Below, one piece after another: positions 1,689 to 63,860 of a DNA stretch of 64,000 bases. The notes below the pieces were generated by a model. That model saw nothing but the letters and a program-made list of their open reading frames with translations, was not told the DNA's origin and made no database searches. Source of the stretch: Kudoa neothunni (Eukaryota; Animalia; Cnidaria); assembly GCA_964304625.1 (NCBI GenBank), contig OZ199839.1, positions 10,137,087 to 10,201,086 on the forward strand, given 5' to 3'. A program made the translations under genes and the position numbers. How positions within the stretch are numbered: the stretch's first letter is position 1; the number at the start of each line of letters is the position of its first letter.

Positions 1689-4006
1689 TTAATTACCACC
1701 ACCTAGTGATTTTTGCCTCTTTCTTAATAATCTTTTATATTTTCTTTTTACTTTAATTCTCCTCTCTATAAATTGATCATATCATACCATATTCGAATGA
1801 AACATACTTGCTGGAATAACCACGCTAACTTTATTTGATTTTGTAGCAGGTATGACATGAACCGTGTATTGTTTCCTGGCTCTGTATTTATGATTATAGA
1901 TTATGGATGAGCATAAAGGTGCAGATGAACATTTCCCGGCATTAGGATCTTTATAGCTGTCGGAAACAGACGCTGAATTGTCTTCTACCCCCAAATCTGA
2001 GGGCAAACAGGAGTATACGGTCTCATGTTTATCGTTCGTTTTCACCTGGACGACGAAATAACAAGTAGTGGTTGTTTGTTTACCGTTTGAAAATTGTCCG
2101 TTCAGCTCAAAACCTCCTCGAATGTGTTTGTATGATACTTTAAAAGTATCCCTCGCTAAATGTAGTCCATATTTGCACGCAATTAAGATAATATACTACC
2201 TAATGTAACGTCTTTGTAGATAACGGATCCATAGGTAGAATGAGCCGTAACTTTGAAATCGTACAGAGCATTTGGATCCAATTTGACAATCGCCTTGGTG
2301 TCTCTACACTTACCTCGACATGGATAGCTGTCAGTGCATACGGCACATCTGTATATGTTTTTTCCAGCAGGGCTTAGGTAGTAAGCGCATGTAGGTTCAT
2401 CCGGAGAATTGCCAGGATTGCCTTCGAGAACCTTGGCCAAAATAACATTACCATTCAAGTGTAACCCTTCGTTTGAGAAATGTTTATCTTTCTTATGAGC
2501 TTTAATAATATGTAATAAATGACATAAATAAATGTCACCATTGGCTACCTGTTCTAATAAATATATGTTCTTTAAACTTCACAGTTCCGTCATTGGCAAT
2601 ATTGGCTACTTCTAACACGTAAGGACTGCCACTTTTTAGATCATTCAGCACTAGCTTGCTGCAATCTTTTTTGCAATTATGAATTTGAGGGAGTGAACTT
2701 CCGGGTTCACAACTTGTTACATCTCCCACAGGTTTGCGAGGTTGATCTGCATGATAGTGCGAAATCACGCACGTCTCAAACTTTTCAGATTCATCTGACG
2801 TTGGTTTAAATAATTGAGCATTTAAGGTTAACCCATTTTCTGTGTATTCGGATAGCAACTCGTTATCATTTTCATTGAATACTACACAAAATAAACACTA
2901 TCCAGCTCTGTTATCAATAGTTTATTACCAAATTTTTTCGCTTTGTATCCAATGTAGGTGTTGTATATTTTGAATAATGGGAAATATCGGGTTTGGATGA
3001 TGACCTCTATAACCGGAGTGGACTCACTAAGTACCAATTCGACGTCTCGGCACAACGAATAGCAGTTCGAGTCCCCACTGTTTCCACACTTTGATTCGTA
3101 GGGCTTATTGTTAGATGCAGAGTGACCACTTCTCGCTCTGAACAAACACATCTCAAATGGAAACGCGTTTGTGAATTTTAGTAGATATTTGTGGGTATCC
3201 CCACCCTTCGAACGTGTCACATAGTAGTGTGGTTTGTAGATATCAATTGTAGACATCATAAATACGTTGGGAATGCTATAGGTTAGACTCGGAAGACTTT
3301 CGCATCTCATTTCAAATCGAGGAATCATATAGTTCATTTGGACGCTGTTATCTGTGTTGTCTGTGGCACATGACTTACTGGCTGTTCCTGCAGCATATTT
3401 TATATCTTCATAGTAGATAGGACATGCAACTGGGTTGCAGGTTTTGGTTGCAAACTTCAATTTTTTCGTTTCACTATCAATAGAAATTCTCACGCTGGGA
3501 TTAATCAATAATGCTATGAGTTGATAAAAATAATTCGAAAAACTCTATTTACGTGTAGAGAAGGCAAACAAATGTTTTTGTTCTGCGCCGCTATCACCAT
3601 TGGCAATTACTTGGATATATTGATTTTGACGCGGATTGATGGCGTCAAATGAGAAAGTGTAGCTACTTCCTTTTTTTCCACAATTAACCACACAGATATT
3701 TCCATCAGATGATTCATTCTTAGGGCAATTTGCAATATTATCAAAGGTAGAGGTGGCACTATTGTATTTCAACAATCGGCACTTTGTTGCGTTATTGAAA
3801 TCGCCAAGTTCAAGTTTAAAGGCCATTTCATTTTCGACGCCCAGTTGATAATTACTGTAGGATAATTTACTGCTGTTATCGCTGTCATCTAATGGTTTCG
3901 TTTCAAAACTGTTAATGTCTAATGTGTGTAACAATCAATAAATTTAAGTTTATTATAAATTACATAGCAGAACCAACAAAAATAATATTGTTGAAAACTT
4001 TGGCAT
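1689..4006 (-). CDS. Cys-rich multi-module surface/secreted protein, copy A (signal peptide, no TM helix found, polybasic C-terminus)
   Basis: Exons 4006-3964, 3918-3553, 3513-2929, 2881-2549, 2499-2200, 2155-~1808 and a short last exon, joined by 39-49 nt phase-1 GT-AG introns. N-terminus MPKFSTILFLLVLLYINS. Homologous exon by exon to copies B-D (e.g. KLKFATKTC.PV.CPI.Y, PC.G.C.D, PLCSSII). The 3' end is uncertain: stop at 1689, or at 1617 with one more intron. Confidence 0.8.
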
Positions 4007-11968: not shown

Positions 11969-12168
11969 AAAGCCGCTAAGAACAACTTCGAATAGATTCG
12001 CAATGAATGGAGTGACTAAAAAATAGACGGAATTAAATGTTGTTTATCGAGTCAAATAAATGATCAGCCAGTTTTCCGCATTATCAAAAATGAGCGAATA
12101 AATTCTATAGTTGAAACGCTGAGGGAAACAAATTTCCAAGGCTGACTAAAAATGACGCTTCACGACGT

Positions 12169-13453
<1,285 letters not shown>

Positions 13454-28024: not shown

Positions 28025-31000
28025 CTACATTGAATCTTCAATAACAGGTTCGTTCATGGAAACGGGCTCATTTTCAGTAGCGACTGAGGTTGGATAGTTG
28101 GAAACAATATCTTCTTGGACAATGTTGAATTGATTTTGAGAGTCATTTATCTATAAAATAATCAAAACTCATAATTCAAAGCAAGCCTTACCTTAGTTCC
28201 GTCTGACTCATCATCTTCAATAGTAGGAGGTTGTATGAAATAGGGAATTTTACCACGTTGAAAATCACTGATAATCATTTTGGCGACAGTATTAATATCG
28301 GGTTCACCTCCCTATTCCACGTCGCAAATCGTTAATATTATTGAAAATAAGAGGAACCCCATCAAAAATTACCTTCAACAAACGACCATATTTAACAGCA
28401 ACCTTTTCCAGAAAATTCTCCCCATTTGTCCATTCTAAAACGCCATATGTTCTTTGCATGTATTTTGGTTCGACTCTTTGAAGCAACTCATCCAGATAAA
28501 TATAGGCATCTTTGATGTATTCCACACGAACCACACCTTTTAATACAATATCAGCTTCAGTTTGGGTGCTGTCAGGGGGAACAACGCCTGGGCAGTCAAT
28601 CAAAAATATTTTTTTCAGCAGTGTAATGTATTGCCAAACCTAAGGACATAACTCATTAGTTAACAGTTGATGAGGAGATTTTCGACTTTGGTTTCACCGG
28701 GGATAGGTGCAACATTACAGACTTTCTTCATTTTCAATGTGTTGATAATAGAACTCTTACCCACATTAGGATAACCAATAATGCCGACGCTAATATTTTT
28801 TTTGTCGGAGTGCAACTAAATTTCCAAGGTTAGATTTTATTTAAGAGATCACTGAAAATCGCACTCTACTAAACTGTCGCAATAGTTGAAAAACGGCATT
28901 TTTGCCAAATGACTTCTTCATATCCGCATGAAATGCAATACATGGATAGTCTTTGGAGAGAATAAATAACCACTTTTTCTAAATTGCAACAAACTTAACT
29001 CATGATGAACTGGGCACTTCATCTTACAACAACCCATGACGGAACCAAGTCACATTTGTTTAAAATGAGTATCATGTGTTTGAAGGGTTTTTCAGTTTTG
29101 ATATATCGTTCAATTTTCGAGCTACGAGTGCCCATAGGATCTCTCGCGTCAAGAACCTAAGATAATAATTTTGTGTTACTACGTGAATGTACACATACAG
29201 CCATGACTAACACCAAAAAGTAAGCTAATAACTCCTTAAGTTTATCAAATCAACTCAATTTTTGTCTTAAGAAAATTGTAAAATCTTTGAATCCACAGAA
29301 ATTTTAATAATAAACTAATATCTAATTGAACATAGGGAAATACACTAACAAAAAAACGAACCCTTAACAATAAATATATTCAATCAAATAACTAATCCAA
29401 ACAATAATCTTCAATTAAGAATGTAAAGAGAAAAATATCGTTATGCTATATTTTAGGAACTTTGGTGTCATAGCGAATTCGAGTCCAAGAACCTCATTAT
29501 TATAATTATTTTTGTCCAAACATTTTTAAATCAATTAGGAAAGTTATTTACTAACATGAATATAATTAATATGTCGTGATTTTTGTCACAACCCACTCGA
29601 TCAAAGTACTAAAAAACATATTGATTGAGATTATAACTAATCGACAGTTCAAATAAATGGACTATTATTTGCGTGCATTTTCTATATCTCTACCTTAATT
29701 ATATTACCAAGAAATTATGTCACAAAATAACAAACATAATAAAGATATCGAATCCACTTCAGATTTAAATCGTTGTTCTAAGTCAAAAATACGTCGTAAA
29801 AAATGATGGAAGTATTATTTACCATAAAAATAATTAAAATATTTAAGAAAAACATAATCCCATTAATCCTTATAAATATCACTTTCAAAAATTCATTAAT
29901 ATTAGGTATTAGTACGCGAATTTTGACAAAAACATACTTTCATGTACACCATGGAAAATACAAGTTTAAATTAACGTATGGCATTAATGGATAATCTAAA
30001 AAATTAATAAAGCGCAAAAAACGCATTAAATATTTTCCCCCCATTTAAAGCGAATAATTGAATCGTTTTTTTCGCAAATGATCGTTTAATTATGAATACT
30101 AAAATTCTCCATTATTTCAATCCCACAAAAATGTACACAAGACTCTAAAATAATAAATTTGGTGGAATTTTAATTTTAAATTTATAACTACGTAAAAATA
30201 AAGTTAAACATAAATGAATAATACTTTGGGGGTGATATTCAGTAAAAGCCCCCCAAAATATACATAATTTTAATAAATACTAAAAATATTTATAGTTTTT
30301 TTTAATTAAAAAATAATAAAGTTTAAAATCGATTATTAGGAAAATTCGGGCCAGCGATTTCTTTACCTTACGGCGGGCGAGCGAGCGGTATAACGGGGTT
30401 CCGGTTAACAGGACATAAATAATGTCATGTGCAAGCGTATTTTAAAATTTCTATTTAAAGCATTGTTTACTCGAGTTATAAACAATTTTTACCAGTTGTC
30501 AAGTAAAATATTTTAACTTCTAAAACTTTAATAAAAAATATTGGCATATCTATTAACTAAGAATGTGGAGACTCAACAGAAAAAATAGTACATGATTATG
30601 GGAGAAAAACACATCTATAAAGGAATAAACTATTTTTTTAAATAATCGGTAATTAATGTTTTTTTAATATACTTAAAGGCATATATTAAAATATAGTATA
30701 AATTTACATAGAAACTGAACGCTTATCCTATGTTTTCAAAGGAGAATTTATAAATAATTAACAGAAATATTTTTGTTTCAAATATTGCATTGATATATAT
30801 CAGATGTGGCTAAACGGAGGCTCTTGAAAAACATTTTTTTGAGTTGAATTTTTTTTAATTCCACCGGCACGTTAACTCGAGAAAACTGCAATGTTTAAAC
30901 TATTTTATCAAGTGAATAAACGAATTCTTTAATTGTAAACTAAATAATATTTTTGGTTGGAAAACATAGTCAAAAACTACCATATAGTTTTAATATTTTA

Positions 31001-40503: not shown

Positions 40504-41344
40504 ATGGAGGAGATGCAACGGACACCTTGGTATTCATAACCCACATAATGTTAGCTGATGTTTTTGTGTGTATGTAGTCCGGAAAGAATATTAGAAGATA
40601 CTGGAGGAGCGTTTTTGATTGGATCTATTGGGAGTTCAATTTTGTACACCCTGAAAGGAATACGAAATATGCCGGTGGTATGTTTTTATTGGTGGTGAAT
40701 TTTTATCATAAAAAATCGTTAAGGGGCACAAAATGAGGGGTATCTCTTCCATGATACGAATGAGAAGTCCGACAGTTGCAGGTGACGATTGATTGGATTT
40801 TATGTGGTTTTATCGACATAATCTAGGCAATTTCGCTATGTGGGGTTTAGCATTTTCTTCGGTAGAGTGTACTTTGGTTGGAATACGCAAAAAAGAGGAT
40901 CCTTTCAATAGTATTATGGCTGGAGGTGTTGCCGGTGGATTGTTAACAATACACAGTATTTTGGGTTGGTGTGTAACTGGTTGTTTGATTTTGTGATCAA
41001 CAGAGGGTGCTAAAGCCATCAGAAATTCTGCATTCTTTGGATTCTTAATTTTAGCTCTTATCGAAGGGGTTAGTTATCAACTTAACAAATCGATGCAACA
41101 GCAGATGGAAAATAGTAAACACTTTGGGCTCCAATATAATGATGTTAATATTGTTGATATAGTGCAAGAAATGAATAACCGACTTTATGGTATTCAAAAC
41201 AACCCAAAAAACAAAGGATCCCCTCCTGCCGCTCCTACTGGGCGTATGTCAGATCTTGACATAGACACCCTCGGCCCAGCTGAACTTGAAGATCCCAGAA
41301 TCAACAATTTTAAGTTGAACAGAAAATTTAGCCTTTTTAGTTAA
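40504..41344 (+). CDS. TIMM17: Mitochondrial inner-membrane translocase subunit Tim17
   Basis: Five exons: MEEMQRTPCPERILEDTGGAF..GNFAMWGLAFSSVECTLVGIRKKEDPFNSIMAGG..GFLILALIEGV, then a long hydrophilic tail. Confidence 0.93.
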
Positions 41345-45435: not shown

Positions 45436-46183
45436 CAGTGGTGGGCACAACTTTTGGTTCTACGGGTCACATTGGCTCATTACAAAAGCTTGGAGGGCCG
45501 CATTGTTGATTAAGTGTTTTAGGAGAACTTAAATATCTATTGGTGGTTTTTCTGACATTTTTGGTACAATAAAAAAGTTAGTGTATAAGTTAATTTAAAA
45601 AGGAACTAAATAATTTTTAAAAAATAGAAATTTGGTGATCGGCATACTATTGCAAGTTTCGATCGGAATAATAGATTTTATCGCTTTTCAAATATGTTGA
45701 TAAATTAGATTTTTTTAAACTCGGCGAATGAAATGGAAAATATGGATATGGTTCTTATTGCGTCAAACCTAATTTATGTATGAGTATCGCATCCTCATGT
45801 TTTTCTGCTATTTAGTTATTTTTAGATTCTTTTTGTTGTGAATTGAATCTCGTGTACCAGTTTTTTTCAATGATTGATGACATATTATTTTGTTTTCAGG
45901 GCGTATTAGATCTTACCTCATTCACGTTTATATATGATAATCATAGATACGATGCAAGCATAGGTAAAACATCAAATCAGATAATAAAATCGCGTAAAAT
46001 TAAAGTTTACAAATCCAAAATATTCATCAAAAGGCTGTTAGTTTATTTTTTTATGGAAGATAAATGCTGTCTTAATGTTTCTAGATTTTGAAAACATGTA
46101 CATACTCGCGCAAATTTCAGCCTCATAAACCCGCCCACGGGCCGTACAAAATTTCTTCGGGGGCCTCACTTTGCCCAACACTG
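45436..46183. mobile_element. 748-bp hAT-type MITE, copy 1
   Basis: TIRs CAGTGGTGGGCA / TGCCCAACACTG; direct repeat of 51655-52402 with about 3 substitutions seen by eye. Confidence 0.9.
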
Positions 46184-46189
46184 TAACTG

Positions 46190-46866
46190 TACTATATAAA
46201 GCAAGCAGGTAATCCGTGTGTGTGTCAGTGTGTATACATTTTTCATTCTTTATAGAGAGATATATCGCTCCATTTGAGCACATATATGGAAAGATAAAAT
46301 TTTTTTTTAATGTAGAAAAATACGTAAAAAATTATAAAAGGTTTGCATCCTGAAAAATGACTAAAAACATTTTCACGTGATATGAGAGGTATGATTTCAG
46401 CATTTATGCTAACATATAGGTCATTTCGTTAAAGTTATAAAAAGTTAATTTTATGTTTATCGTAATGTTTTATTTTACTTTAAAATTGCTGAAAAGTAAT
46501 TTATTAATTGAAATAGTTCAAATAATTAAGGTAATATTACGTTATGTAGCCATGCATTAATATGAAATTCATTTATTGATGTTTAACAAGATTAGTCCTA
46601 TTTATGTGGTATGATTTAGAGATTACTACAAACAACAAGGAGAAAATCGATTTTTAGGAGGTCTAAAGAGGAAATTTTAAGCGCTCAGTAGTGTTCATTC
46701 GTTTTTAAAAATATTAAATAAGGTTCATGCGTCCAATGAGTTAAATAAATCATACGTTAATGGGGAAATCTTTGTATTATTTATCAAAATACTCTAAATT
46801 TACTTTGAACTTCAACTGACTTCGACCGGGCAAGGAAACCCACGCGAAGCGGGACTTTTGCGCTAG
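46190..46866 (+). mobile_element. Helitron-like element missing its terminal TC
   Basis: Starts TACTATATAAAGC..CCGTGTGTGTGTCAG; ends with hairpin CCCACGCGAAGCGGG then GCGCTAG|T. Confidence 0.7.
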
Positions 46867-48433
46867 TTAAATATAAATGATTCTACAAAATTATAGTTGA
46901 AAACAGCTCTCAGAGGAGAGTTTCTAGGATTAAGAATTTATAATATGCAAACGTACATCCCATTTTAGATTAAATTTTACCGTTCCAATAACCTCCGCGA
47001 TACAAAATTTATATTTTCTAATTACTTTTGAAATTGTTTTCGGTACTGTTTAAAATAACCAATTCTTGTATTTCTTCGCTTAAATCATGCTGGAAACTAC
47101 ATATATAAAATATTTAAGTGGGAATTTTTATTTCAATTCAGATTTTTAGCTGAGCTAATTTCAAAAACGAAAGAAAATTTTAATTTTTAGAAATAAAATA
47201 ATACAAACTTTAAATGTATTTATAATAAAACTATTTCTAAAACGTTATTTTTTATAGTCGAACTAACGATTAATTGAATATACAATAAATATCGATATTG
47301 CGATGTTTGATATAGGGTATTTGGCATTTTTTTAATTTCTGTAATCAGCATTGTAAAATTTTTCCTATATTTTATCTTTTAATTTAACTTATATACGAAA
47401 AATATGAAATAACATTCAGTTATACATTCGAACGTCCGGGATTGTGAGAGAAAATTTTTTTGGTGAAAAGTTGAAATTATTCAATATTATGAATCATTTA
47501 GATCAATCTTAAAGACCAATAAATGGCTGTAGAACGCCATAGAATATCATCGATTCCGTTATTTTGAGTTTTATTCAAATAAGGATAGATTATTCTTCTC
47601 TGAATAGATTTTCGTCAATACATTGTTTAAATCAACTCATATGTTGCTACTATACGTAAAGTGACTATAAATGAAAAATTATCCTAATTTATATTGAGTT
47701 TACTACCGGATAATGTCAAAATAAGAAAAAAATATATTTATAAGTTTTTGATCATCAATAAGGCAGAACTTTGGCTGTTGTTCTTAAAATCACCAATTTC
47801 ATTTGAATAAAATATTCATTTAAAATTTTAAGACTCTTTTGTTATAAAAATTCACTTACATCTGAAAAGTGGGAGCGTTCATAATAGTATTGTTTACGAC
47901 TAAGTGGAACAATTTTATGAGGTAATTAGCAGCTATAACAAAGAAAACAGTAAATCCTGGCGCGGACGCTCCTTTTTATGTACAATGCACTCAATGAATA
48001 TATGCAATAAAGATTGAGTGAAATTAAAAGGAAATGAAACAATAAACAGATCATCATCTCACGATTGACTGCTTTATTTACAGAAAAAATTGGCGGATTT
48101 CTTCGACCATCTTGATACTTTAAAAAATATTGATCAAAAGTTCGCGAAAGGTATATGAAAAGTTCTTATACTGTAAGAACGATATTCTTCACATTTATAA
48201 TTAAATAATACAATCAGAATAAACAATTTTTTTATTAAAAAATAAAACATTTACTCTTTTAGCGCACACGAAAAAATCTATATTCGGCGGTAAAAACTCA
48301 GGCCTCGATTTTTTATACAATATCGAGACCTTATCGTGTATTTAAATGACCAATCAAAAACTATCAGGCTAATAAAAAATTTCTTTTTAATAATTTATAG
48401 ATTTATTGTGTGATCTTTTATAAATGCCCGAGT

Positions 48434-51400
48434 CTAATTTTTCTTTTTGAAAACCACAAATCCGATCGCACCTGCAATCATAATTCCAATAATCGCAACC
48501 ACTATTATTCTAAAATATTTTTATTTCAAACGTAAATAAGTTTTCTATCCATACATGATAAAGGTTTTAGAACTAAATAATAGATTAAGTAATTATTTAA
48601 CAATTAAACAAACCTTGAGCTGCTTTTTGCACCTAATAATAATATTTAAAAATATTATTATGTAAATCATGTTTTACCTTGTTCAATAACAGCCTCACCA
48701 TAAATTGAAGAATCCTTAGAGCCGTAAACAATCAAATGATAACTGTTACCATCTGCTATCCTGTTAATTGTAAACGACTTGCAATACGGAAGTGTTTTGC
48801 ATCCAGTATCTCTTGACTTCATGCATTTTTTTACTATTGGCATCGATTTGGCACTTGAATTAAGTAGTTTCCACTTGCATCTTGATTTGTCGTTGAGACT
48901 AGAGGGAAGTGTATTTTCAATATTGAATACTTCACCATCTCTTGTTATAGTTACAAATATTATTTTTTCCCTGTCTGTTGGGTTTCCTCTTGGAGCCGCT
49001 ATTTATTTACGTTAATATTTATATTATAATATATCTTAATTACTGGGTAATATAGTGATTTCTTCGGGTGAAGATTTTTCCACGGCAGTGACCAACACTT
49101 TATATTCTTCTTTTGCATCATAATCATCGAATAAAATCGAACTACATAATGGAGGCGATGCACATGTGTTTGAACTTTGAGGAGCTGCTGTAGTAGTAGT
49201 TGTAGTAGTAGTAGTAGTTGTTGTTGTCGTTGTCGTTGTAGTAGTAGTATCAGATTCAGTTGTTTCAGCTACATTTGTTTGAATATCGCCAGTTCTTGCA
49301 ATATTTGACTTAATAACTGTTGATTTAAGATTAGAACGTTGAATGGTGCTAGCTTCATCTTGATTAGGGCTAGGTTCGGTCTCAGCTGGTGTGTTTGGTG
49401 GAGTCTCAGGAGTTTCCGGAGCAGTTGATGGTATCTCAGGAGCCTCACACGTATACACGTTATCGAATTTGTCATTATTCTTTATTTGGATTGTATAATG
49501 ACAAATGGCTTCTGGAGTTTTTTTCGATAATTGAACATTCAACTCCAAACCTCTCTCAGTATATATTTGTGAAATTCTCAATCTTGCCAAATCTTTTCAT
49601 AAATTATATATAAATCATTTGAAAAATATACTTGTTGTAACATTTTCATAAACATGCTCTTTATAATCTTTGTCAGCAACGACTTTAATATCATAGCGAG
49701 TGTTTGGTTCGAGATCAATGATGGTTATTGACTCGCTACACCTTCCTCTACAAGGGTTCGTCTCGGTGCATGTAGCAACATAAAATGTATTTTTTCCTGT
49801 TGGACTTATGTAATACTCACAGTTTGGCTCATCTTTCTTTTGTCCTCCTGTTCCTGCAATGGCTGTTAACGTAGATGTTGACTCTGTTTTAGTTGGGGCT
49901 GTTGGTATAAAGACATTATTGCTACCTTTTTTTTCTTTTTAAAATTTATAGCTTTAATCATTTTTTGTTATTAATTATTTACCTGTCCTTATAAGTATTT
50001 GTTCTTTAAATTGGGTTGGCTCACTTAAACCAGATAAAATTTCTATAATATAAGGTTTACCCTCGGCAAGCTTTTCAATCGCCACGTTTGTGCAGTCCGT
50101 TTTGCAGGTGGTACCTGAAGAACCTTGAGTCCCAGAGCTGCAATCTGTATTGGTGGAAGAGGATGGTTTTATTTTGTCAGCAGCATAATGTTTGATTGTA
50201 CAAGTAGTAAACTTGGTAACTCCTGTAGGATTAAAAAGTGCCACATTCAATGACACACCTTGATATGTATATGCAGACAACAATCCAACTCCTGTCTCTG
50301 CAATTGCTATATATATGAATTAAAATATTTTATTATTTACAATATAGATACCAAATTTGTTCTGGATAAATCCGTCTAAACTAGCATCAGCAGTTTGTGT
50401 CAGCTCATGATTTCTGGTTTGAATTAAAACTTTGTATATTTCTTTTGGTTCATTTACGGTAAGTTCAATGTCCTTACACAGTGCATAACACTTTCCATCG
50501 GTATTACCACATTTAGACTCAAATGACTGACTAGTTCCTGCGTTTTTTCCATCCTTAATACTGAAGATGCATATTTCTGACGATAGCATTGAACCTGTGA
50601 ATTTAATTAGCAACTTTTTAGTATCTGTCTGTTTTGTAACATAATATTGAGGTTCGTAAATAGCCATGTTTTTCTTCATATATGTATTTGGCATATGATA
50701 AAAGAAACTGGGATAATTCGTACATCTCATCTCATAATGAGGAATTAATAGATCGAACTCCAAAGCGTCAACTGTGTTATCCGCATCGCATGTTGCTCCT
50801 TTTGTACCACTCTTGAATTCAGCATCTTTGTAAAAGATAGAGCAATCAACTGGAGTACACGTTTTTGCGGAAAGTTTTAGTTTTTTATTCTCACCAGATA
50901 TTGTTACTTGAGGATTTACTATTAATGCTAAAATTTTAAATAAATAATTAATTCGAATTTTTATTTGATTACGTGTTGACAACCCAAACACTTTTCCCCC
51001 TCTTGGGTGATTAGTCCCTTGGACGTTAGATTTATCTGTATCAGCTTTTACGTATATGTATTTTGTTCTCGGCGAAAGACTGTTAAAAGGAACATCGCTT
51101 TCTGGTTTGATACATTCAATTACGCATTTATCAGATACGGATGTATCATATCCAGGACAACTTGGGATTTCGCCAAAAGCAGCTGCAGTTGTTGGACTTG
51201 CGAGAGTTGTCGCTTCATTAGATATCATAATACGGCAAATTTTACCAGCTGCATATTCTGTGCCACCAAGTGTACGCTTAAATTGATTTTTGTTACTAGC
51301 GCTATGATAAACAATCTGGTAAGTCAATGTAGCCTCCGGCGCAGATGCAGCCTGAGGTGCTTGACTTGCTCTTACATAAAGTAATTTAAGAAAAACTAAT

Positions 51401-51470
51401 ATAAATTAAAGTAACTACAATAAAATAAATATATACTAAGAAAGTAACACAGCAATTGAATCTTTAACAT
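48434..51470 (-). CDS. Cys-rich multi-module type I membrane protein, copy B (intact)
   Basis: Ten exons splice in frame. Signal peptide MLKIQLLCYFLIFLKLLYVRA, six module exons bounded by phase-1 introns, a 20-Thr tract (49189-49248), 19- and 18-nt microexons, TM IIIVVAIIGIMIAGAIGFVVF and tail KKKN*. Confidence 0.85.
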
Positions 51471-51654
51471 GATTAGTAGTATTACAGTAATCAATGGTTT
51501 GAGCCGAATACATGAATATCATAATATGATCAAAACTTTTCGGATGCAAGTGAATACGAATCAAAGATATTTCAGTAATTAACTCGATAATATTTATTTA
51601 ACGATAAAATGGTTAATATGAGATTAATTATTAACGTGCAATTATCTACTATAT

Positions 51655-52402
51655 CAGTGGTGGGCACAACTTTTGGTTCTACGGGTCACATTGGCTCATT
51701 ACAAAAGCTTGGAGGGCCGCATTGTTGATTAAGTGTTTTAGGAGAACTTAAATATCTATTGGTGGTTTTTCTGACATTTTTGGTACAATAAAAAAGTTAG
51801 TGTATAAGTTAATTTAAAAAGGAACTAAATAATTTTTAAAAAATAGAAATTTGGTGATCGGCATACTATTGCAAGTTTCGATCAGAATAATAGATTTTAT
51901 CGCTTTTCAAATATGTTGATAAATTAGATTTTTTTAAACTCGGCGAATGAAATGGAAAATATGGATATGGTTCTTATTGCGTCAAACCTAATTTATGTAT
52001 GAGTATCGCATCCTCATGTTTTTCTGCTATTTAGTTATTTTTAGATTCTTTTTGTTGTGAATTGAATCTCGTGTACCAGTTTTTTTCAATGATTGATGAC
52101 ATATTATTTTGTTTTCAGGGCGTATTAGATCTTACCTCATTCACGTTTATATATGATAATCATAGATACGATGCAAGCATAGGTAAAACATCAAATCAGA
52201 TAATAAAATCGCGTAAAATTAAAGTTTACAAATCCAAAATATTCATCAAAAGGCTGTTAGTTTATTTTTTTATGGAAGATAAATGCTGTCTTAATGTTTC
52301 TAGATTTTGAAAACATGTACATACTCGCGCAAATTTCAGCCTCATAAACCCGCCCACGGGCCGTACAAAATTTCTTCGGGGGCCTCACTTTTCCCACCAC
52401 TG
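51655..52402. mobile_element. 748-bp hAT-type MITE, copy 2
   Basis: TIRs CAGTGGTGGGCA / TTCCCACCACTG; near-identical to 45436-46183 and in the same orientation. Confidence 0.9.
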
Positions 52403-55149
52403 TCCTATATCAATATGTATGTGCAAGAAACTTTTTAAAAGTTAACCTGATGATTGTGCAATGATCCTATCTATAATTTGTGTTTATTTTTTATATACAT
52501 GTGGGTGGATTTTTTATTTAATTCATTACATCATAATAAGAGGAGTGTGTGCATGAATATCGTGTATATTTTGTGTACATGCGCAAATTCATAAATTTTG
52601 GCGCTTTTTTTTAATTAAATATTAAACTAAGTCTAGCATTTAATTTATTAAGAAGATTTTAATTTTTATATATTTAAACGGTTTATTAAGCTAGTTTAGA
52701 GCGTCAGGAAATTAAACAAATAATAAATATATTAATTAATTAATTAAACTCTTTATTAATCGTTAAAAAATTTGGCACAAATTTTTTTTTCAGAGTGATC
52801 ACATTTATTTAATTTCTTTAAGAATTTACTCTAAATTTTAATCATAAAATTATGTTGAAACAATCTATAGTTCACCTCTTTGATTGTTTAACGTTGTCGG
52901 TTCCATAGAGAAACATTATATAGTAAATTAAATTAAACTATAAAGTATGAAACTAATATAAAATAACAAAATATAATGATAACTCTTAAATATGTTATTA
53001 GTGAAGGTTAAATTGCAGAATAGCGGCCGTAACCCATATCAGCGACAACATACAAAAACGAACCTGTTGAATGTTTTATTATTTAGTATTTATCAGTGTT
53101 GCGTCCCCAGTAGGGTAACTTTGGCAACAGCTATTTGTCAGCATAATAATATTGGTTGTAATCTATTATATAAATATATTTAACTCCTAGTTACTCGCGA
53201 TTATTTCAACAGGAGCTATACCATCAATTAAGCCGGTTCGAGTAAAGCATGTTTTGTGTATTCTAAAATTGAAGTCGGTAAACTCTGAGTTTGATGGATT
53301 ATCACAATCTATCCTTAGCGATTGCCTAGTGTATCAATTCCTTTTCTATAAGGCTATAAGGCTATAAGACTATAAGACTAAGAATTTCATATTTAATATA
53401 ATCATTAGTTAACAAATTGCAGCAAATGCATAACGTTAATATCACAAATAATTAATTGGATGATATTCAGACAGTACTACGATTAAATATTCAACAAATA
53501 TCACATTAATTTGATTTAAAAATTTAGGAATAAGGTCCGAACAAATTATAATCTTTATTCGGTAAGTGCGGTCATTATTCTGCATTTTAATCTAAAATAA
53601 TGTTGGCATATAATAAAAAATATCAATAAACCATTCATATTTTACTAGTTATTTTTTGCAATAATTAATGGAATACTCAATGAGAGAATATCTAATAAAA
53701 AATTTTAACTAATTTATTTCGTTAATTAATAATAGTAATAATAATAATATTTGAATTTCTTATTAAGATATGAAAGGATAAACGCACGATTTAGCTGATA
53801 ATTTTGATATAGATATATTTTTTTATTATTTTTTCGATCGTTGAATAATTTCTCGCTTATTACAAATAAAAGCTAACTAGATTAAGGTTTATTTAATAGC
53901 GTTATATCTGATGGAATATATCTGTTTAAATTTAACTTTAGAAAGTTGGATTAAAACAATGTTATTAATTTCAATACAAACCATCATACATTATTAACAT
54001 TGAATAGTTGTTTTATAAAGATATAATGTTTGTGGCAGAATCTCAGTATATTAGAGTTAAGAGAAAATTGATTTTGGTTGAGACATGAACATGACTCACC
54101 TTTTATTACGATTCTAGGGGACTATTAAATTTTTCGTTTCGATAAAAGAATTTTTTCTATCAATTTCACCAGTCCTATCATTAAACATTAATCTTTTTAT
54201 AGTATTTATTTATGCTTCTATATTGGATATAGTTACATTTATATAATACATATTTTATATTAAAAAATTCTGTATGAGCACTTAAAAGTAAAAGTTCGAT
54301 ATATCGTTGTCTCCTAATTAGAGAAAATTTATAAATTTTATTTTTTCAATATTCAATTAATTTCTTATGTTATATATTATATTTAATGGATAAATGACGG
54401 TATTATTTAAATATCACCTTCAATTAATAAGTTCAACCTAATTTAAAAATTTAAAATGGATATGATAAGTAAATATAAAAATATGGAATAGTAACTGGGC
54501 ATATATTTAATATATTAATTAAATGCATTATAAAATATGAAATAAAAGTACACTACCACGCAAAGATGGTAATTTGGGGTTTTAAAATTTTAACGAATTA
54601 TTTTTGCCAATCAAAATAATCTAATTTGAGTATTTTGTTACAGAGATTGATTGTACATTTTTATAATTAAATATCAGTTTTGTTTAATTATAAAAATTCA
54701 TCATTTACGTAAATTTAATAAATATACGCTACCTACAATATTTTTGAGATATATTTATTTAAAAATGATAATAGTTCGTTGGACCCCTTTAGTATAAGAG
54801 AATTATAAATTTACTTATAAAATTTTAAAAAAAAGCATATTTACATAATGATCACAATGTTCATATTCAAACCGGATTGTTTCGTATAATGATAAGACTT
54901 ATTATACCAACATATAAAATTTTCCACATTTTGGTATATATCTTCGTAGGATGATGATGTAAATATGTAATATAAGTGTTATTAATTTTAATAAAACTTT
55001 TCATTTAATAAAAACCAACAAATTTATAAATATTATTCATTATAAAATAAAACGGGTACAATTAACACTAAAATATATTGCAAATAGTGATTTAATACAA
55101 AAATAATATTGTTTCAATGAGATAAATAAGTTATTGATAAGATGGATCC

Positions 55150-58114
55150 TTATTCTTTATTCATCTTGTAAACAAAGTACAATCCAACAGACACGATAAC
55201 TATAACAATTGGTACCACAATACCGATTATCCTAAATGGTATCTTATTCAAACACGTCTATATTTATTTATAATACATGCTGGTATTCGCCCTATAAAGC
55301 AAAATTATTAAAAATTATTTACATACAATTTTACCATGATTTATTGGAAGCCCAACCTAGATCAATGATTAGATTAGATTAAATTTTGTTAATTATTAAT
55401 AATTACCTTGTTTTATTCCCCCAACCCCGTTGACTGTAGGATCTTCGGAGTGAATAACCGTTAAATGATAATCATTGGTATCGCTCACACCCTCAATTAT
55501 AAATGACCTGCATCTAGGTAGTGTACAATCGCTAACTTCAATGTATCACATTTTTTTACTATCGGTAGATTAGGATCGTTTATGTTTCTCAACATCCATC
55601 GGCACACTGAATTTTCATTCATCCCTTTTGGAAGCAATGAAGTGATATTTAAGGTCTCGCCAACTCTTTCGATCGTCACTATGATTTTTTTGTCTGCTTC
55701 CACAGGATTCGCAGGAAAGAACATCTATTTTTGGACGATATATTAGGATTTTACATTGTTTCGTGGTTAAGTATTATACTTTGGGGAATATCAATGGTAA
55801 CTTCTTCCGATCTGCCTACAGCCGTAACCAATACTTGATATTCTTTGTCTGCTTCGTGACCCTCACCGATAATTATGTTACTGCATAGTGGTAGTTCAGT
55901 GCATGCTAGGAACTTAGACTGAGTAGTCTCAGCAGGAATGATAGAAGCTGGAGTTGTTGTAGAGGAATTTAGAGGTGTATCACCTCCATTATTTCCTCTC
56001 GCTACTCCATTATGATAAAAATTGACCCTACTGTTCAACCGAGATTGTTTTATTCCTTGATTTTTCGGAGGCGTGTCAACATTAGTAGTAGGTGGACGTG
56101 CCTGTGATGGAAAAGGGGCAACTGCTGGGCAGGAATATACTACGTTCGAGCTAGTCCCATTTTTGGCTTTAATTTTATAGCTACAAACTGCTTTTGGGAA
56201 TGCAGTTGCTAAGGTTCCGATCACTTGAAATCCTTTGACTAGGAAATTGCGGGATAGGGTGAGTGTTGAAAAAGCTAATAAATTTAATTTAAATAAGAAT
56301 GCGATAGCATATTTTTACTAGTTGAAACATTTTCAAATATTTTTGTTCCATAATCTTTGTTTGAAATAACTTTAATGTCATAACTTGTTTTGGGATGTAA
56401 ATTTATCAATTTCTTGGTGTCTTTACAAAATCCTCTGCATGGATAGCTATCTTCACATTCTGCTTCCACGAACATGTTTTTACCTGTTTTACTCAAGAAA
56501 TATGAACACGTTGGTTCTGTAGCTCCTGTTTCCACAACGCCGTCGACTGCTTTGACTACTGCAATCACATCGTTTGTCGTAGGTGATCTAGTGACGAAGT
56601 TAGTTCTGCTAGCTTTATCTAAAAACATTTAACAAAATAAACAGTCCATTTCATTACTTGTCCTGAAAAATAAATATTCTTTGAAGTTGTCGTAATTAGG
56701 TATAGCCGTAGGAGTTATTTCAATCATATACGCTTTTCCTGGTTCCAGACCACCAATGGCAGAATTGGGTATACATGCGCTTCCACAAGAAACGCTTGAG
56801 CATTGTGTAGCAGTTCCCGTGTTAGGTCTGATCTTATCAGCTGAGAAGTGCTTTAAAGTACATGTTTTGAATTTTACATTTTCGTCACTTAGCATATATA
56901 ACGATCGCGTAATTCCTAATCCTGTAGGAGAATATGTTGTTAATAGAGTGCTCATATTTGTAGACTCAACGATTGCTATAATTAACGATAATTATACAAC
57001 AATTACTAAAAATCATACCATATTTTCTCTCTTCATAGCCATCAAAGATAGCATCAGTCGTTATTAGTTTATGATGCCTAGTTTGAATTAATATTTTCAC
57101 GATTGGCTTGGATGCAGCAAGTGCCAATTCCACATTATCGCATGGTGCGTAACAATTTTTCCCAGTTTCACCGCCACACGATGATGCATAGGTGGATGTT
57201 TCACCTCTGGCACTGTCTGCTGCATCTTTTATATTAAATAGACATATTTCGGATGGAAATGCATTCTGAAATTTAAGGAGATATTTAGTCTTTGTAGTAT
57301 CACCTTCCTTATATGTCACATAATATTGAGGTTTATAAACGTCAATATTTGTTTTCATATAAGAATTTGGCATACTGTAGAAAAAACTTGGATAATTCGT
57401 GCATTTCATCTCATAATGAGGAATCAACACATCATAATCAACTGTATTCTCTTTATTATCGTCTACACACGTATCACCATTGGTACCGGCTGCGTAGGTG
57501 ACGCCCTTGTAAAAGATAGGACATGCTACTTTAGGGCATGTTTTAGTTGCGAGCTTTAATTTCTTGTCATCATCCGTGGATATTGTAGTTAGCGGATTCA
57601 CCAGCAATGCTATTTATACTTTATTTTATGTAACTATTCAATTTAACATACGAATAGGCAATCCGAACACGTTTCCACCAGTATTCATATTTTTTATCTT
57701 TTTTGCATTATCCCCAGAATATACATAAATATATTTTTTTCTAGGTGATAATATATCAAACGTCAACTTTATATTATCTCCAGAACAAGGACGTAAACAT
57801 TTGCCATTTCCATTAATACCATCATTGTCAGCACACGTATTAATCTTATCAAATTCAACAGAATCTTCCTTTTCTTTTCTTATTAAACAAATTTTCCCAT
57901 CTGCAGCATAGGCCGTTCCAGATAATGTGAGATGTACCTTATCTCTGTCTGCTATGCTATATGATAGTTTTTTGGCAGTTGTGTTAGACGCATCTTGAGC
58001 TGCATGCACAGAATCTTTAATTATGACTATAAATGGTTAAAATGCGTTGATAATTCTAATATAATTACAGAAAAATGTAATCAGAACATTAACTAAGACA
58101 AAAGGAATCTTCAT
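55150..58114 (-). CDS. Cys-rich multi-module type I membrane protein, copy C (two apparent indels in exon 7)
   Basis: Signal peptide MKIPFVLVNVLITFFFIIKDSVHA; exons 1-6 in frame; TM IIGIVVPIVIVIVSVGLYFVY, tail KMNKE*. Apparent +1 near 55718 and -1 near 55541 relative to copy D. Confidence 0.8.
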
Positions 58115-59606
58115 AGTTATTCAATATGAAAGTGGAATGCTTATATAATAAAGTATAAAGAGATGACAACCACCCATATATCTGATATAATAACCTCCTT
58201 AAAACATCACCAGTTAATAAATGGCAATTATATACTATTATTACAAAATTAGTAGTTATATTAGTATTCATGATCATATCCTTCACTTACTTTTGCTAAA
58301 CGTTCTCTTAGTAATCAAATATAGGTAACCTTTTCATAAAACAATAATAGCAATCAGTAATTATACTCCATTTTTTTTCAAAATCATTATGTTAGAGAAA
58401 TATGATTTCAATGAATTTTTCTAATTTGAAGCTCATTTGAAATGTTTCGTTAGTTAATATATAATACTCTTTATATTTTTAACAAGCTGAATAATAATTT
58501 TTTTAAATATATTTAGAGGAAAATATTTTTACGTATGTTTAAATTAATTTTAATTTTTTCACGAGAATAAAACAATCAATGAAAATTATTTCAGCTTAAA
58601 TAATAAAATTCTTATCATTTTAATATCTTCAGTCATCTTAAAGTCACTAGAAACAAGTAAAAAAACATTTTTATAAATAATAACATTTAGTATTTTTTAT
58701 GAGGCGTAATATATAAATAAATGAATAACATGTCTGGAACGAGTTATTTCAATTATACTTAGCCATAAATAAAAAAATTCATGCAGGTTGTGAAAAGTTT
58801 TTATAAGATGTAAGTATTGTCTTAAACATTAGAACTAGTGTCTACTGATCGGCCCAGGGTAAAAATTTGCGTTATCCATAAATTATGGATAACAATGAAT
58901 ACCAATTCTTTTTATTTAAAAAATAGAATCGATGGCTCTTCTACAATAAAATTAAATCTAAAAATGACATTAACTATAATTGCTGAATTTTTGTTTTATC
59001 ATTATCATACAAATGTTCCATGTTATTAATAAAAATTCCCCATAAAATATACTTGTAAATTAGGTATCGGCATAAAAGGCGCGATGCGTTGCTTCGCCCA
59101 ATGATTGAGGAACAATCGCAAGTGTCCAGTGTCCCACAAATTTCATCCATTTTTGATTGAGTATGCTTCTTGTTCCGGTAAAAGATATTTTAAAAGCCAG
59201 TCTACTATTGATTAACATGTATACGTACGGTTGCCATCTGTTATTATATTCAAGTATAACTGTTTACGTTAAATTTAAAATTGGACAAAGAACATTCTGT
59301 TTATCTGAGGGAATGAGTCAAAATATTCGTAAAGGTTAATATGCCCCGCCATAGAAGTTATGTAAACTAATAAAGCAACAAAATAATAAAAATAAACTTT
59401 GATATTTTGTTGTAATGGCGTTTATTATAAACAGATTAACCCTATTCTAAGCAAGAAAATTTTACCATTACAAGCTATCAAATTAAATAATCTATACAAA
59501 AATACATAGGAAAAAATGAGCCACTAAATAGTTTATTTTATTTTCGGAAAAACTTCAAATAAGTACGAAATATGTTATATCGATTTTTATTGTACTTCCA
59601 CAAGTG

Positions 59607-59706
59607 CGGTCGAACCTCGATTACCCAGAAAATTTGTGACCAGCGCTTTTCTTTCCGGATAGCGAGGCTTCCGCTAATAGAATTCTGAATAATCGAGATT
59701 TGACAG
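59607..59706. mobile_element. ~100-bp pogo/Tigger-type hairpin MITE
   Basis: CGGTCGAACCTCGATTACCCAG versus reverse-complemented right end CTGTCAAATCTCGATTATTCAG; TA on the right flank. Confidence 0.55.
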
Positions 59707-60897
59707 TAGTTATAAAGTCGATTAAAAGAGTAATCCACAAACACGGAGTTGAGATATGATCACAAAGTGTTTTGGAAAGCTAAAAATTGTTAACGGGTGC
59801 CCTTTTTTTAAATTTTGATGGAGACGTATATATATTTTTAAGCGCCCAAACTCAATTAGTTTTGTTTTGCGCCATGCATATAAAATACTCAAAAAATATG
59901 ATTTAAGTGTTAAACGAAATTTTATCCAAATTCAGTTTAATTAATTTTGATACTCAAGAATTTTTTGAAAAAAACTTTCAGGTCTACTACGTCAAATATA
60001 TTTTCTTCATAATAATTATTATAATTGTGCGAAAAAAGAGACACAATTGTATATGTAATTACAATAGAGACTACTGTAATAATTATGATTGTAGTGAAAA
60101 TTAGTATTTGTAGTTGTAGTTGTCGCTAGCTTGATACACGCGATAGAGGTTGATGTTATGGGCATTAGGGAGCGTAGTTACCAAATCCTTTATTTTATTG
60201 GGATCATAACTGTAATTTAACCACTTAACTATGAATAATACGATAATCCAGTCCACCTGGATATATATTTTACCATCCCTGCATCATAAGTTTAAAAATA
60301 AATTACATTCTACTTTGGAAAGTTAATATTATATGTTTCTATGATTTTAAACTAATTACTATTTCCAATCAGTATAATATATTTTAACGATTTTGTGAGT
60401 AGATTATTATTCAGTTCACGTTAAACAACAGTTTTGATTCCTAGATACAAATAATTTACATAAATTTAATGAATATATGCTCCGTGTGACATTTTTAAAT
60501 GATATAATTATTTGATAACTTTAATACATAGACAACAATTCTTTGATTGATGATTTTACGTTTGCTAAAACAAGTTTAAAATAAATGCATATATTTACTT
60601 AACTATCACTGTGTTAATATTTAAATCGTATCCTTCATTATAATGATAAGAAACCTATTATACTAACAAAAATATTTTTCATATTTTGATATAAATCTTT
60701 GTGGGATTACATAAATATAATATAAAGTGACAAATTTTAATAAAATATTCCATTTAATATAAAACAACCAATTTGTAAATATAATTTACCAAAATCTAAA
60801 AGTGGTTCAATTAACAGTCAAATGTATCACAAATATTGATTTGATATATAAAAACATTGTTTTAATGAGATTAATAAACTCTTGATAAGGTCGATCC

Positions 60898-63860
60898 TTA
60901 TGCTTGATTCTTCTTGTAACCAAAGTATAATCCAACGATTACGACAACAATAACAATTGGTACCACAATTCCAATTATCCTAAATGGTAACTTACTCAAA
61001 CTCGACCATATTTAGTGTTAATACATGCTGGTGCTCGCCCTATAAATCAATGACAATAAATATTATTTTTACTCAATGTTACCTTGATTGATTGGAAGTC
61101 TCTCCTATATTTATGATTAAATTAATTATTAATTATTGTTAAATACCTTGTTTTATTCGCCCAACACCTTTAACTGTAGGATATTTGGAGTGAATAACCG
61201 TTAAATGATAATCACTAGTATCGTTTACGCCTTCAATTGTGAATGACTTGCATGTAGGTAGTTTACAACCACCAACTCCACTTGTAACACATTTTTTCAC
61301 TAATTGGTAAAGAAGGATCGTTCAAATTTCTCAACATCCATCGACACCTTGAATTTTCATTCTTTTCTTTTGGAAGCAATGATGTAATTTTAAGGTGTCA
61401 CCAACTCTTTCGATAATCACTGTGATTTGTTTGTCCAATTCCGCAGGATTCTCAGGTGGAATATCTATTTGTATGTGATGTATTAGAACTTTATATAATT
61501 TGGTTGATAAATATTGTACTTTTGGGGGTATCGATGGTAATTTCTTCCGATCTTTCCACAGCCGTAACCAACACTTGATATTCTTTGTCTGCTTCGTAAA
61601 CCCTCACCGATAATTATGCTACTGCATAATGGTGGTTCACTACATGGTGGGAATTTAGAATGAGTAGTCACAGGAGGAGTGGCTGATGCCGGAGTCGTCG
61701 TAGATGAACTTTGAGATGTATCACCTCCGCTACTTGCTCTGGCCACTCTATTACTGTGATAATTAGTCTCACTGATCAACCGAGATTGTTTTGTTTCTGG
61801 ATCATTGGTAGACTGGTCAACATTGACGGTAGGTGGTTGGCCTGCGAAGGAGATGGACAACAGTTGGGCAGGAATAAACTACATCTGAACTAATTCCATT
61901 TTTAACTTTGAGTTTATAGCTACAAACTGCTTCTGGATATGCAGTTGTTAATCTTCCAACAACCTGAAATCCTTTGTCTAGGAATTTGTGGGATAGAGTG
62001 AGGGTTGAAAAGGCTAATAAACGTAAATTAAATGTGATTGCGATAGCTCATTTTTACTAGTTGAAACATTCTCAAATATTTTTTCACCATAATCTTTATT
62101 TGAAACAACTTTGATATCATAATTTGTTTTTGGGTGTAAATTTATCAATTTCTGTGTATCCTTGCAAAATCCTCTGCATGGGTTACTATCTTCACATTCT
62201 GCTTCTACAAACATGTGTTACCTGTTTTACTGATGTAGTATGAACATGTTGGTTGGGTAGTTGTTGTTTCCACTGGTCCGTCGATTGCCTTGATTGTTGC
62301 AGTTACGTCATTTGTCGTAGGTGTTGTAGAGACAAAGTCAGATCCTGTATTTTTAACTAAAGAAATTTAACGAACGTAATAAATCTATTCCATTACTTGT
62401 TTTCAAAAACAAATATTCTTTGAAGCCATTGTAATTATCCATATTTGTTGGTGAAATTTCAATTATATATGCTTTTCCTGAAGCCAATTCATTTATTGCG
62501 GCGTTTGATGAACAGTCTGTTCCGCAATCATTACTTGAGCATTTGGCGGCAGTTCCATCATTTGGTCTGAGTTTATCAGCTGGAAATGCTTTAATGTACA
62601 AGTAGTAAATTTTTTGACATCTTCACCATCTGGATTATAAAGGGATCGTTTAAATGTTACACCGGTAGTAGAATGTGCAGTTAAAAGAGAACTTGCGTTT
62701 GCATCCTCCACAATAGCTAAAATTATTAAACATTTCTGTAGAACTGATAAAAACTATACCAAATTTGCTCTCTTCATAACCTTCAAAGGCAGAATTTGTT
62801 TCTTCTAGCTTATGATGCCTGGTTTGAATTAATATTTTCACGATTGGCTTGGATAGATACGGCAAGTGCCAATTCCACATTATCACATGGTGCGTAACAA
62901 TTTTTCCCAGCTCCACCACCGCACGATGATGCATAAGTGGCTGTTTCATCACTAGCATTGTCTACTGCATCCTTTATATGAAATAGGCATATTTCCGATG
63001 GAAATGCATTTTGGAATTTAAGCATATAATTTTTCTTTTGAGTGTCGCCATGCTTATAGGTCACATAGTATTGAGGTTTATAAACGTCAATATTTTTTTT
63101 TCATATAAGAATTTGGCATATTGTAGAAAAAACTTGGGTAGTTCGTGCATTTCATCTCATAATGAGGAATCATTGGATCAAAATCAACTGTATTTTCTTG
63201 ATTCTCGACTACACACGTATCACCAGCGGTACCGGCTGCGTAGGTGACGCCCTTGTATAAAATTGGACATGCTACTTTAGGGCATGTTTTAGTTGCGACC
63301 TTTAACTTCTTGTCGGCATCAGTAGATATTGTAACTATTGGATTCACCAGAAGTGCTATTCATAATTTATTTTATGTTACTATTCAATTTAGCATACGAG
63401 TTGACAACCCAAAAAACGTCTCCGCCATTGTTTTTTTCTTTTATTGCGGTAAATTCCTGGCCAGAAAACACATAGATGTATTTTGTTCTTGGTGATAGAG
63501 CATTAAATGCCAGTTTAATATCATTATCGGAACATACACGGAGGCATTTATCGTTTCCATCAGGAGTATCACTATTAGAGCATGGGGTTATTTGTTCAAT
63601 ATCGGTACCATCTTCCTTTTCTTTTCTTATTAGACATTTTTTTCCATTGGCATCATAGACCGATCCGGATAAAGTGAGATGTACTTTATCTCCATCTGCA
63701 ATGCTATATGAGAGTTGTTTATCAGGTTTGGTAGACACATCTGGAGTTGCATGCACAGATTCCTTATTTATGACTACAAATGATTAAATACAATGATAAT
63801 TTTAATAAAATTACAGGAAAATATAATCAAAACATTAAATAAGGCAATAGGAACCTTCAT
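60898..63860 (-). pseudogene. Cys-rich membrane protein copy D: tandem duplicate of C with multiple frameshifts (pseudogene or consensus errors)
   Basis: Colinear with C at a ~5.75 kb offset, including introns and 3' flank. Single-base indels near 63413, 63095, 62855, 62584, 62217, 61852, 61599 and 61389. TM IIGIVVPIVIVVVIVGLYFGY, tail KKNQA*. Confidence 0.7.

What the first reader, a model, noticed from the sequence alone, without database searches (positions are those of the whole stretch)
48434..63860. Unrecognised family of modular Cys-rich, FN3-like surface proteins (4 diverged copies)
Seen: signal peptide, then six exon-encoded modules (mostly ~100-140 aa, one ~195 aa), all bounded by phase-1 introns. 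Each has C..C..Cx3-4C followed by an FN3-like strand signature (LDPNALYDFKVTA, LEPNTRYDIKVVA, LEPGKAYMIEI, LKSGSPYVLEV). A TM helix and a 4-5 residue tail follow. Cysteines are fixed while intervening residues vary strongly among A, B and C/D. Established: phase 1-1 modules typify shuffled extracellular domains. Inference: a diversifying adhesin or variant surface-coat family with no signalling tail, as expected at a parasite-host interface. I recognise no named family.
Basis: partly seen in the sequence, partly recalled or inferred. Interest (0 to 1): 0.8.

Follow-up and report, generated by a model that had tools for sequence, protein, structure and literature searches.

The report
Huge FN3 surface family in Kudoa
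These genes are real members of an apparently undescribed family of at least 200 membrane-anchored proteins, each a chain of disulfide-stapled fibronectin-III-type domains, in the tuna muscle parasite Kudoa neothunni; the family may be the parasite's variable surface coat, but neither surface location nor switching has been shown.

Summary
Largely confirmed, with corrections. Only three copies (B, C, D) lie in the stated range. The fourth (A, 1689-4006) lies outside it and lacks module 6 and the TM helix.

B is an intact 877-aa type I membrane protein: signal peptide, six phase-1 module exons (seven domains, because module 2 is double), two micro-exons, TM, four-residue tail. The three indels in C and D that short reads covered are assembly errors.

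The genome is almost certainly Kudoa neothunni. The family has at least 200 loci (450-500 first-look candidates) on all three chromosomes. Predicted folds of modules 1 and 2 are FN3-type sandwiches. No named homologue exists; the only relatives are unnamed contigs of related parasites with the same exon order.

Copies are under purifying selection (omega 0.24-0.39) and mosaic. Modules 1 and 3 vary most and the membrane-proximal modules are homogenised. Best reading: a non-signalling variable surface repertoire. Expression, location and switching are untested.

The scan already reported this family on other DNA of this genome; no paper describing it was found.

The parts
48434..51470 (-). Copy B: intact 10-exon gene, 877-aa type I membrane protein (signal peptide, 7 FN3-type domains, Ser-rich stalk, TM, tail of 4 residues)
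51437..51470 (-). B exon 1, start of signal peptide (completed by the first codons of the next exon)
50973..51395 (-). B module 1 exon; FN3-type 7-strand sandwich (fold predicted on the family alignment); variable
50352..50927 (-). B module 2 exon; two tandem Ig/FN3-type sandwiches; lowest omega
49983..50306 (-). B module 3 exon; most divergent module within arrays
49632..49925 (-). B module 4 exon; weak Pfam fn3 match (E 0.005), ESM nearest clusters FN3
49044..49592 (-). B module 5 exon with Pro/Ser/Thr-rich insert including a poly-Thr run
48678..48998 (-). B module 6 exon; 99-100% identical in its two nearest dispersed relatives
48555..48632 (-). B two micro-exons (48614-48632, 48555-48572) for the stalk; phase 2 introns follow
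48434..48509 (-). B TM exon (Kyte-Doolittle 19-mer mean 3.04) and basic 4-residue tail
55150..58114 (-). Copy C: same architecture; its two assembly frameshifts in module 6 (55539, 55716) are absent from short-read contigs, so probably intact
60898..63860 (-). Copy D: tandem paralogue of C (77% DNA identity); about 10 single-base indels in the assembly, at a contig end; the one tested (61302) is an error; probably intact but not shown
1689..4006 (-). Copy A (outside the finding's range): 683 aa, signal peptide, modules 1-5, polybasic tail, no TM; predicted secreted
45436..46183 (.). MITE-like element with short terminal inverted repeats, left of copy B
51655..52402 (.). 99% identical twin element right of copy B; the same 8-bp word flanks the pair on the outside

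Best explanation
These are members of a large repertoire of non-signalling cell-surface proteins of the myxozoan Kudoa neothunni. SHOWN in sequence: signal peptide, seven ~100-aa four-cysteine domains, stalk, TM and a 4-5 residue basic tail; at least 200 mostly intact loci; purifying selection; mosaic copies. PREDICTED: the domains are FN3-type sandwiches, with the cysteines presumably paired, forming an extended rod. INFERRED: the rod is displayed on the parasite surface facing host tissue (fish muscle cell, blood or the invertebrate host). The membrane-proximal domains act as a conserved spacer, homogenised by exchange between copies. The distal domains, above all 1 and 3, present variable loops that diversify antigenicity or host-ligand binding. 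New variants arise by tandem duplication, patchwise gene conversion and transposon-assisted dispersal. Some members, such as A, replace the anchor with a basic tail and are secreted.
For: Architecture and phase-1 exons. Folds. Family size. 27 of 28 fetched loci open in every covered module. Omega 0.24-0.39 with small omega>1 classes in modules 1, 3 and 4. Recombination signal p=0.002 and nearest neighbours that change from module to module. B against its two nearest relatives, protein identity: M1 78/74, M2 87/88, M3 79/78, M4 92/94, M6 100/99%. Same exon order, TM and short basic tail in a related parasite. Kudoa develops in muscle cells that the host immune system can detect (PMC8481699).
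Against: No expression, localisation or binding data; no RNA run holds the stretch. Positive selection is modest, comes from my own codon model, and is inflated by recombination; the module 4 sites sit at the exon edge. Copies are dispersed along the chromosomes, and no expression site or silent archive was seen. Modules 3, 5 and 6 were not folded.
Confidence: 0.55

Rival explanations
1. Structural coat (glycocalyx, spore valve or capsule wall) needed in bulk. Copy number is dosage plus birth-and-death drift in a repeat-rich genome, and variable loops are merely unconstrained.
For: Most sites are under purifying selection; modules 2 and 5 show no omega>1 class. Gene conversion explains the constant stalk. 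Copy B sits between twin transposons. The genome is 45.6% repeats (PMC12239612).
Against: Distal modules diverge much faster than proximal ones even among recent dispersed copies. Deeply divergent lineages (A, B, C at 22-53%) are kept intact, which simple dosage does not require.
Confidence: 0.17
2. A self or kin recognition code between parasite cells, working like Hydractinia Alr proteins or clustered protocadherins through variant-specific homophilic binding, for cell-in-cell development, plasmodium fusion or mating.
For: Cnidarian precedent for a diverse single-pass family with one domain per exon and Cys-stabilised Ig/Fn3 folds (PMC9546547). Variable distal domains.
Against: No V- or I-set domains in the modelled modules, no ITAM or ITIM tail, copies on all chromosomes rather than in one complex, and no sequence link to Alr.
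Confidence: 0.13
3. Decoys or binders of host immune molecules: cytokine-receptor-like FN3 domains that capture fish cytokines or engage inhibitory receptors, with secreted forms such as A acting at a distance.
For: Structural neighbours include cytokine-receptor FN3 domains and viral decoys. A secreted variant exists.
Against: Those matches are tied at Z 5-7 and 2-16% identity with fibronectin, tenascin and phosphatase FN3 domains, so they show only the fold. Hundreds of variants are more than decoys usually need (own knowledge).
Confidence: 0.1
4. Residents of the secretory pathway or of the capsule vesicle membrane rather than of the cell surface.
For: The tail of B fits a dilysine KKxx retrieval pattern.
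Against: The tails of C, D and the relative L038 do not fit it. The mucin-like insert and hypervariable loops suit an exposed protein.
Confidence: 0.05

Closest known systems
Giardia/Spironucleus VSPs and the 18 VSP-like genes of the myxozoan Sphaerospora molnari (10.64898/2026.02.11.705288)
   Same: Multigene family; signal peptide, Cys-bearing ectodomain, one TM, very short basic tail; parasite surface role proposed.
   Different: 3.3% Cys rather than >10%; no CxxC/CxC repeats; FN3-type domains on phase-1 exons; at least 200 genes rather than 18 in S. molnari.
Hydractinia Alr family (PMC9546547)
   Same: Cnidarian; diverse single-pass proteins; one domain per exon; Fn3-like fold with invariant cysteines; some secreted forms.
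   Different: [quoted passage not shown] Here there are seven domains with four Cys each, a 4-5 aa tail and genome-wide spread.
Fibronectin type III fold (Pfam PF00041; cytokine-receptor, fibronectin and RPTP ectodomains)
   Same: Seven-strand beta-sandwich topology and the late-strand Leu/Tyr signature; phase 1-1 exons.
   Different: Below the Pfam cut-off (17 bits against 25); at most 16% identity to solved structures; lineage-specific cysteine set; no orthologue.
Protist and fungal variant surface repertoires (Pneumocystis MSG, Trypanosoma VSG/MASP, Plasmodium rif/stevor)
   Same: Hundreds of paralogues, mosaic exchange, variable distal part on a conserved anchor.
   Different: Here in an animal, intron-rich, FN3-based and TM-anchored; no expression site or exclusive expression shown.

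Membership tests
FN3 fold | Seven-strand FN3-type beta-sandwich | tested here: met
   Module 1 model pLDDT 74, seven strands, the large majority of the top 50 matches are FN3 domains at Z 5.9-7.1. Module 2 gives two sandwiches, pLDDT 66, Z 5-6. Modules 3-6 not folded.
Pfam fn3 (PF00041) | Score at or above the gathering cut-off of 25 bits | tested here: not met
   Module 4 of B scores 17.4 bits; 12 of 28 module-4 exons match at E<=0.1, best E 0.0045; other modules none.
VSP (diplomonad and S. molnari type) | >10% Cys with more than five CxC/CxxC motifs | tested here: not met
   B: 3.3% Cys, no CxxC or CxC. A: 3.7%, one CxxC. Definition.
VSP (diplomonad and S. molnari type) | Signal peptide, single TM, short C-terminal tail | tested here: met
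   B, C, D.
Hydractinia Alr | [quoted passage not shown] | tested here: not met
   N-terminal module is FN3-type; four Cys per domain; no Alr hit (definition).
Hydractinia Alr | Cytoplasmic tail, often with ITAM or ITIM | tested here: not met
   Tails of 4-5 residues.
Antigenic-variation surface repertoire | Large family of intact paralogues with conserved anchor and variable ectodomain | tested here: met
Antigenic-variation surface repertoire | Mosaic diversification by recombination | tested here: met
   Incompatibility-distance test p=0.002 in two arrays; nearest neighbour changes by module.
Antigenic-variation surface repertoire | Diversifying selection on exposed sites | tested here: inconclusive
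   M1a against M2a significant for modules 1, 3, 4 (p 4e-3, 4e-4, 2e-4), not for 2 and 5; recombination inflates such tests.
Antigenic-variation surface repertoire | Mutually exclusive or switching expression and surface exposure to host immunity | not testable with these tools
   No RNA run holds the stretch; the genome paper had too few parasite RNA reads for annotation.

The most novel reading that the evidence does not exclude
An animal parasite has independently evolved a protist-style antigenic variation system: several hundred FN3-based surface genes, reshuffled by gene conversion and spread by transposons, of which each cell or stage displays one or a few to escape fish adaptive immunity.
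Probability: 0.2. Interest if true: 0.9.

Novelty: new variant of a known kind. Interest (0 to 1): 0.66.

Why it matters
Myxozoans are described as gene-poor: this assembly has 5,316 predicted proteins. A family of 200 to perhaps 450-500 loci equals about 4-9% of that count, yet it has no named protein and is not mentioned in the genome paper. It may have been masked as repeat, since the genome was repeat-masked before annotation; that is my inference. The molecules behind myxozoan persistence and antigenic change are largely unknown, and this family gives a concrete, testable candidate in Kudoa, a genus that damages fisheries. The near-invariant membrane-proximal domains would be natural diagnostic or vaccine candidates.

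Tried and rejected
Pfam and PDB sequence scans gave nothing above cut-off; NMDA-receptor, antiholin and ribosomal S27a hits were rejected as chance.

Foldseek gave no match at E<=0.001, and the ESM Atlas structure search none above TM 0.47.

Profile comparison of the modules with each other was weak (best M5-M6 E 9e-4, M3-M4 E 0.011), so common descent of the modules is likely but not shown.

A two-module alignment (M4 plus M5) stacked the modules on each other and was not used.

Pseudogene status of C and D was rejected where reads allowed a test. Copy E beyond the window looked truncated but is cut by an N gap. Sphaerospora molnari as source was rejected (40 contigs, other telomere word).

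Read loose ends unlike the stretch were not followed.
Full report
ORGANISM. The window's assembly has 40,260,978 bases in 4 contigs. A (TAAACC)n array lies at one place only, near 12.04 Mb on contig 2. The Kudoa neothunni assembly recovered from yellowfin tuna data has 40.2 Mb, three chromosomes, N50 12.0 Mb, one (TAAACC)n end, 5,316 predicted proteins, 45.6% repeats and about 7x read coverage (PMC12239612). The identification is an inference but a tight one. The 18S fragment looks myxosporean to me from memory.

OBSERVATION. Three copies lie in the stated range, all on the minus strand: B 48434-51470, C 55150-58114 and D 60898-63860. B splices cleanly into 877 aa: a signal exon, six module exons with phase-1 GT-AG introns of 39-57 nt, two micro-exons, a TM exon and a four-residue basic tail; it has 3.3% Cys. 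The fourth copy, A, lies at 1689-4006. It encodes 683 aa with five modules and a polybasic end, with no module 6 and no TM in the downstream 1.8 kb. The same phase-1 junctions were recovered in nearly all of 28 other copies. A related parasite has lost the intron between modules 1 and 2 and shows the proline predicted at that junction, which is independent support for the boundary.

FRAMESHIFTS. C has two and D about ten frame-breaking indels in the assembly. Short-read contigs of the same sample lack the three that were covered, at 55539, 55716 and 61302. D ends beside an N gap. C is therefore probably intact. D is probably intact too, but its other indels were not tested.

FAMILY SIZE. Module 2 of C gave 478 first-look candidates, and all 150 scored matched at E<1e-59 on all three chromosomes. 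Module 2 of A gave 451 candidates and of B 498. A 20-base degenerate pattern gave 106 exact matches against 0 in the control. By my hand count the listed places add up to 200 distinct loci. The true number lies between that and about 500. Of 28 fetched loci, 27 are open in every covered module; the sample is biased towards relatives of C.

FOLD. Module 2 folds as two tandem sandwiches (pLDDT 66; matches to FN3 and other Ig-like domains at Z 5-6), so the ectodomain has seven domains. Module 1 folds as a seven-strand sandwich (pLDDT 74), and its top matches are mostly FN3 domains at Z 5.9-7.1. Module 4 has a sub-threshold Pfam fn3 match and FN3 neighbours in the ESM Atlas at 0.92. Module 3 gives only a lead; modules 5 and 6 were not folded. 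These matches show the fold, not a function or an orthologue. Disulfide pairing is inferred from the invariant cysteines.

RELATIVES. A module-2 profile against 1.84 billion representatives, with no length limit, found 17 proteins. All are unnamed and come from Logan or ENA contigs only. Six traced hits come from two runs that also gave the nearest ICMT relatives, at only 41-45% identity, so at least two distinct related organisms carry several divergent copies each. That they are myxozoans is inferred. Modules keep their order there, and one contig ends in a TM and a three-lysine tail. Two contigs show further modules upstream of module 1, hinting at longer forms. No annotated protein of any species was hit. 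Paper searches found no description, and the genome paper does not mention the family.

EVOLUTION. In 26 copies omega is 0.33 (M1), 0.24 (M2a), 0.24 (M2b), 0.34 (M3), 0.29 (M4) and 0.39 (M5). A small omega>1 class is significant for M1, M3 and M4 only. This is my own implementation, recombination inflates such tests, and the M4 sites are at the exon edge, so I count it as inconclusive. Two tandem arrays are clearly mosaic: p=0.002, with nearest neighbours that change by module. Mean DNA distance by module 1-5 is 0.18, 0.17, 0.26, 0.13, 0.05 in one array and 0.21, 0.15, 0.26, 0.10, 0.10 in the other. B and its two nearest dispersed relatives, 90-91% alike over 4.2 kb, show the same gradient in protein identity: M1 78/74, M2 87/88, M3 79/78, M4 92/94, M6 100/99%. 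B lies between two 99% identical MITE-like elements with the same 8-bp word outside the pair, which suggests transposon-assisted dispersal.

MECHANISM. Shown: topology signals, modular exons, family size, constraint, mosaicism and distal-biased variation. Predicted: FN3-type domains. Inferred: a rod on the parasite surface whose proximal domains are a conserved spacer and whose distal loops vary against host antibodies or ligands, with no signalling of its own (0.55). Rivals are a bulk structural coat with neutral expansion (0.17), a self-recognition code (0.13), immune decoys (0.10) and an internal location (0.05). No RNA evidence was available.

COMPARISON. It resembles parasite variant-surface repertoires in organisation. 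It fails the VSP definition on cysteine content and motifs and the Alr definition on domain types, cysteine pattern and tail. It is below the Pfam fn3 cut-off but has the FN3 fold. I class it as a new variant of a known kind.

PRIOR SCAN REPORTS. The scan has reported this same family from other windows of this genome. Those notes agree on organism and size and prompted the gene-conversion test; they are not counted as evidence.

LIMITS. Searches were exon by exon; the joined-model search was left out as required.

VERDICT. Real, undescribed in the literature searched, and large for a reduced animal genome; function untested. Interest 0.66.

Noticed in passing
window 45436-52402: Copy B lies between twin MITE-like elements (99% identical, short terminal inverted repeats). 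The same 8-bp word flanks the pair outside, and a second similar word lies inside with a 6-nt offset, like a composite or cointegrate unit.
   Followed up: partly
window 46200-46870: A further high-copy repeat (83-90% matches at dozens of places) adjoins the left element inside the unit.
   Followed up: no
window 1689-4006: Copy A is a predicted secreted five-module form with a polybasic tail. Its module-2 motif variant recurs at about nine other dispersed places that are not among its top protein hits.
   Followed up: partly
L033 1340-1980 and beyond (G000:C2 about 5.426 Mb): The only 18S rRNA match found is a 3' fragment broken off by unrelated DNA that seems to hold a zinc-finger-like frame; possibly an rDNA-targeting non-LTR element (R8-like, from memory).
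   Followed up: no
L002 (G000:C2 about 10,201,300-10,202,600): Copy E just beyond the window is cut in module 3 by an N gap; a further copy lies at about 10,208,800.
   Followed up: yes
L040 and L042: Relatives in which modules like 4 and 5 precede modules 1 and 2, suggesting longer proteins with a repeated module set, or very tight tandem genes.
   Followed up: partly
L041 470-550: Precise loss of the intron between modules 1 and 2 in a related parasite, while the other introns remain.
   Followed up: yes
window 6085-6936, 28307-28639, about 40800-41340, 12115-13450: Housekeeping neighbours: ICMT; by eye, a NOG2-like GTPase exon, a Tim17-like gene and a zinc-finger gene.
   Followed up: partly
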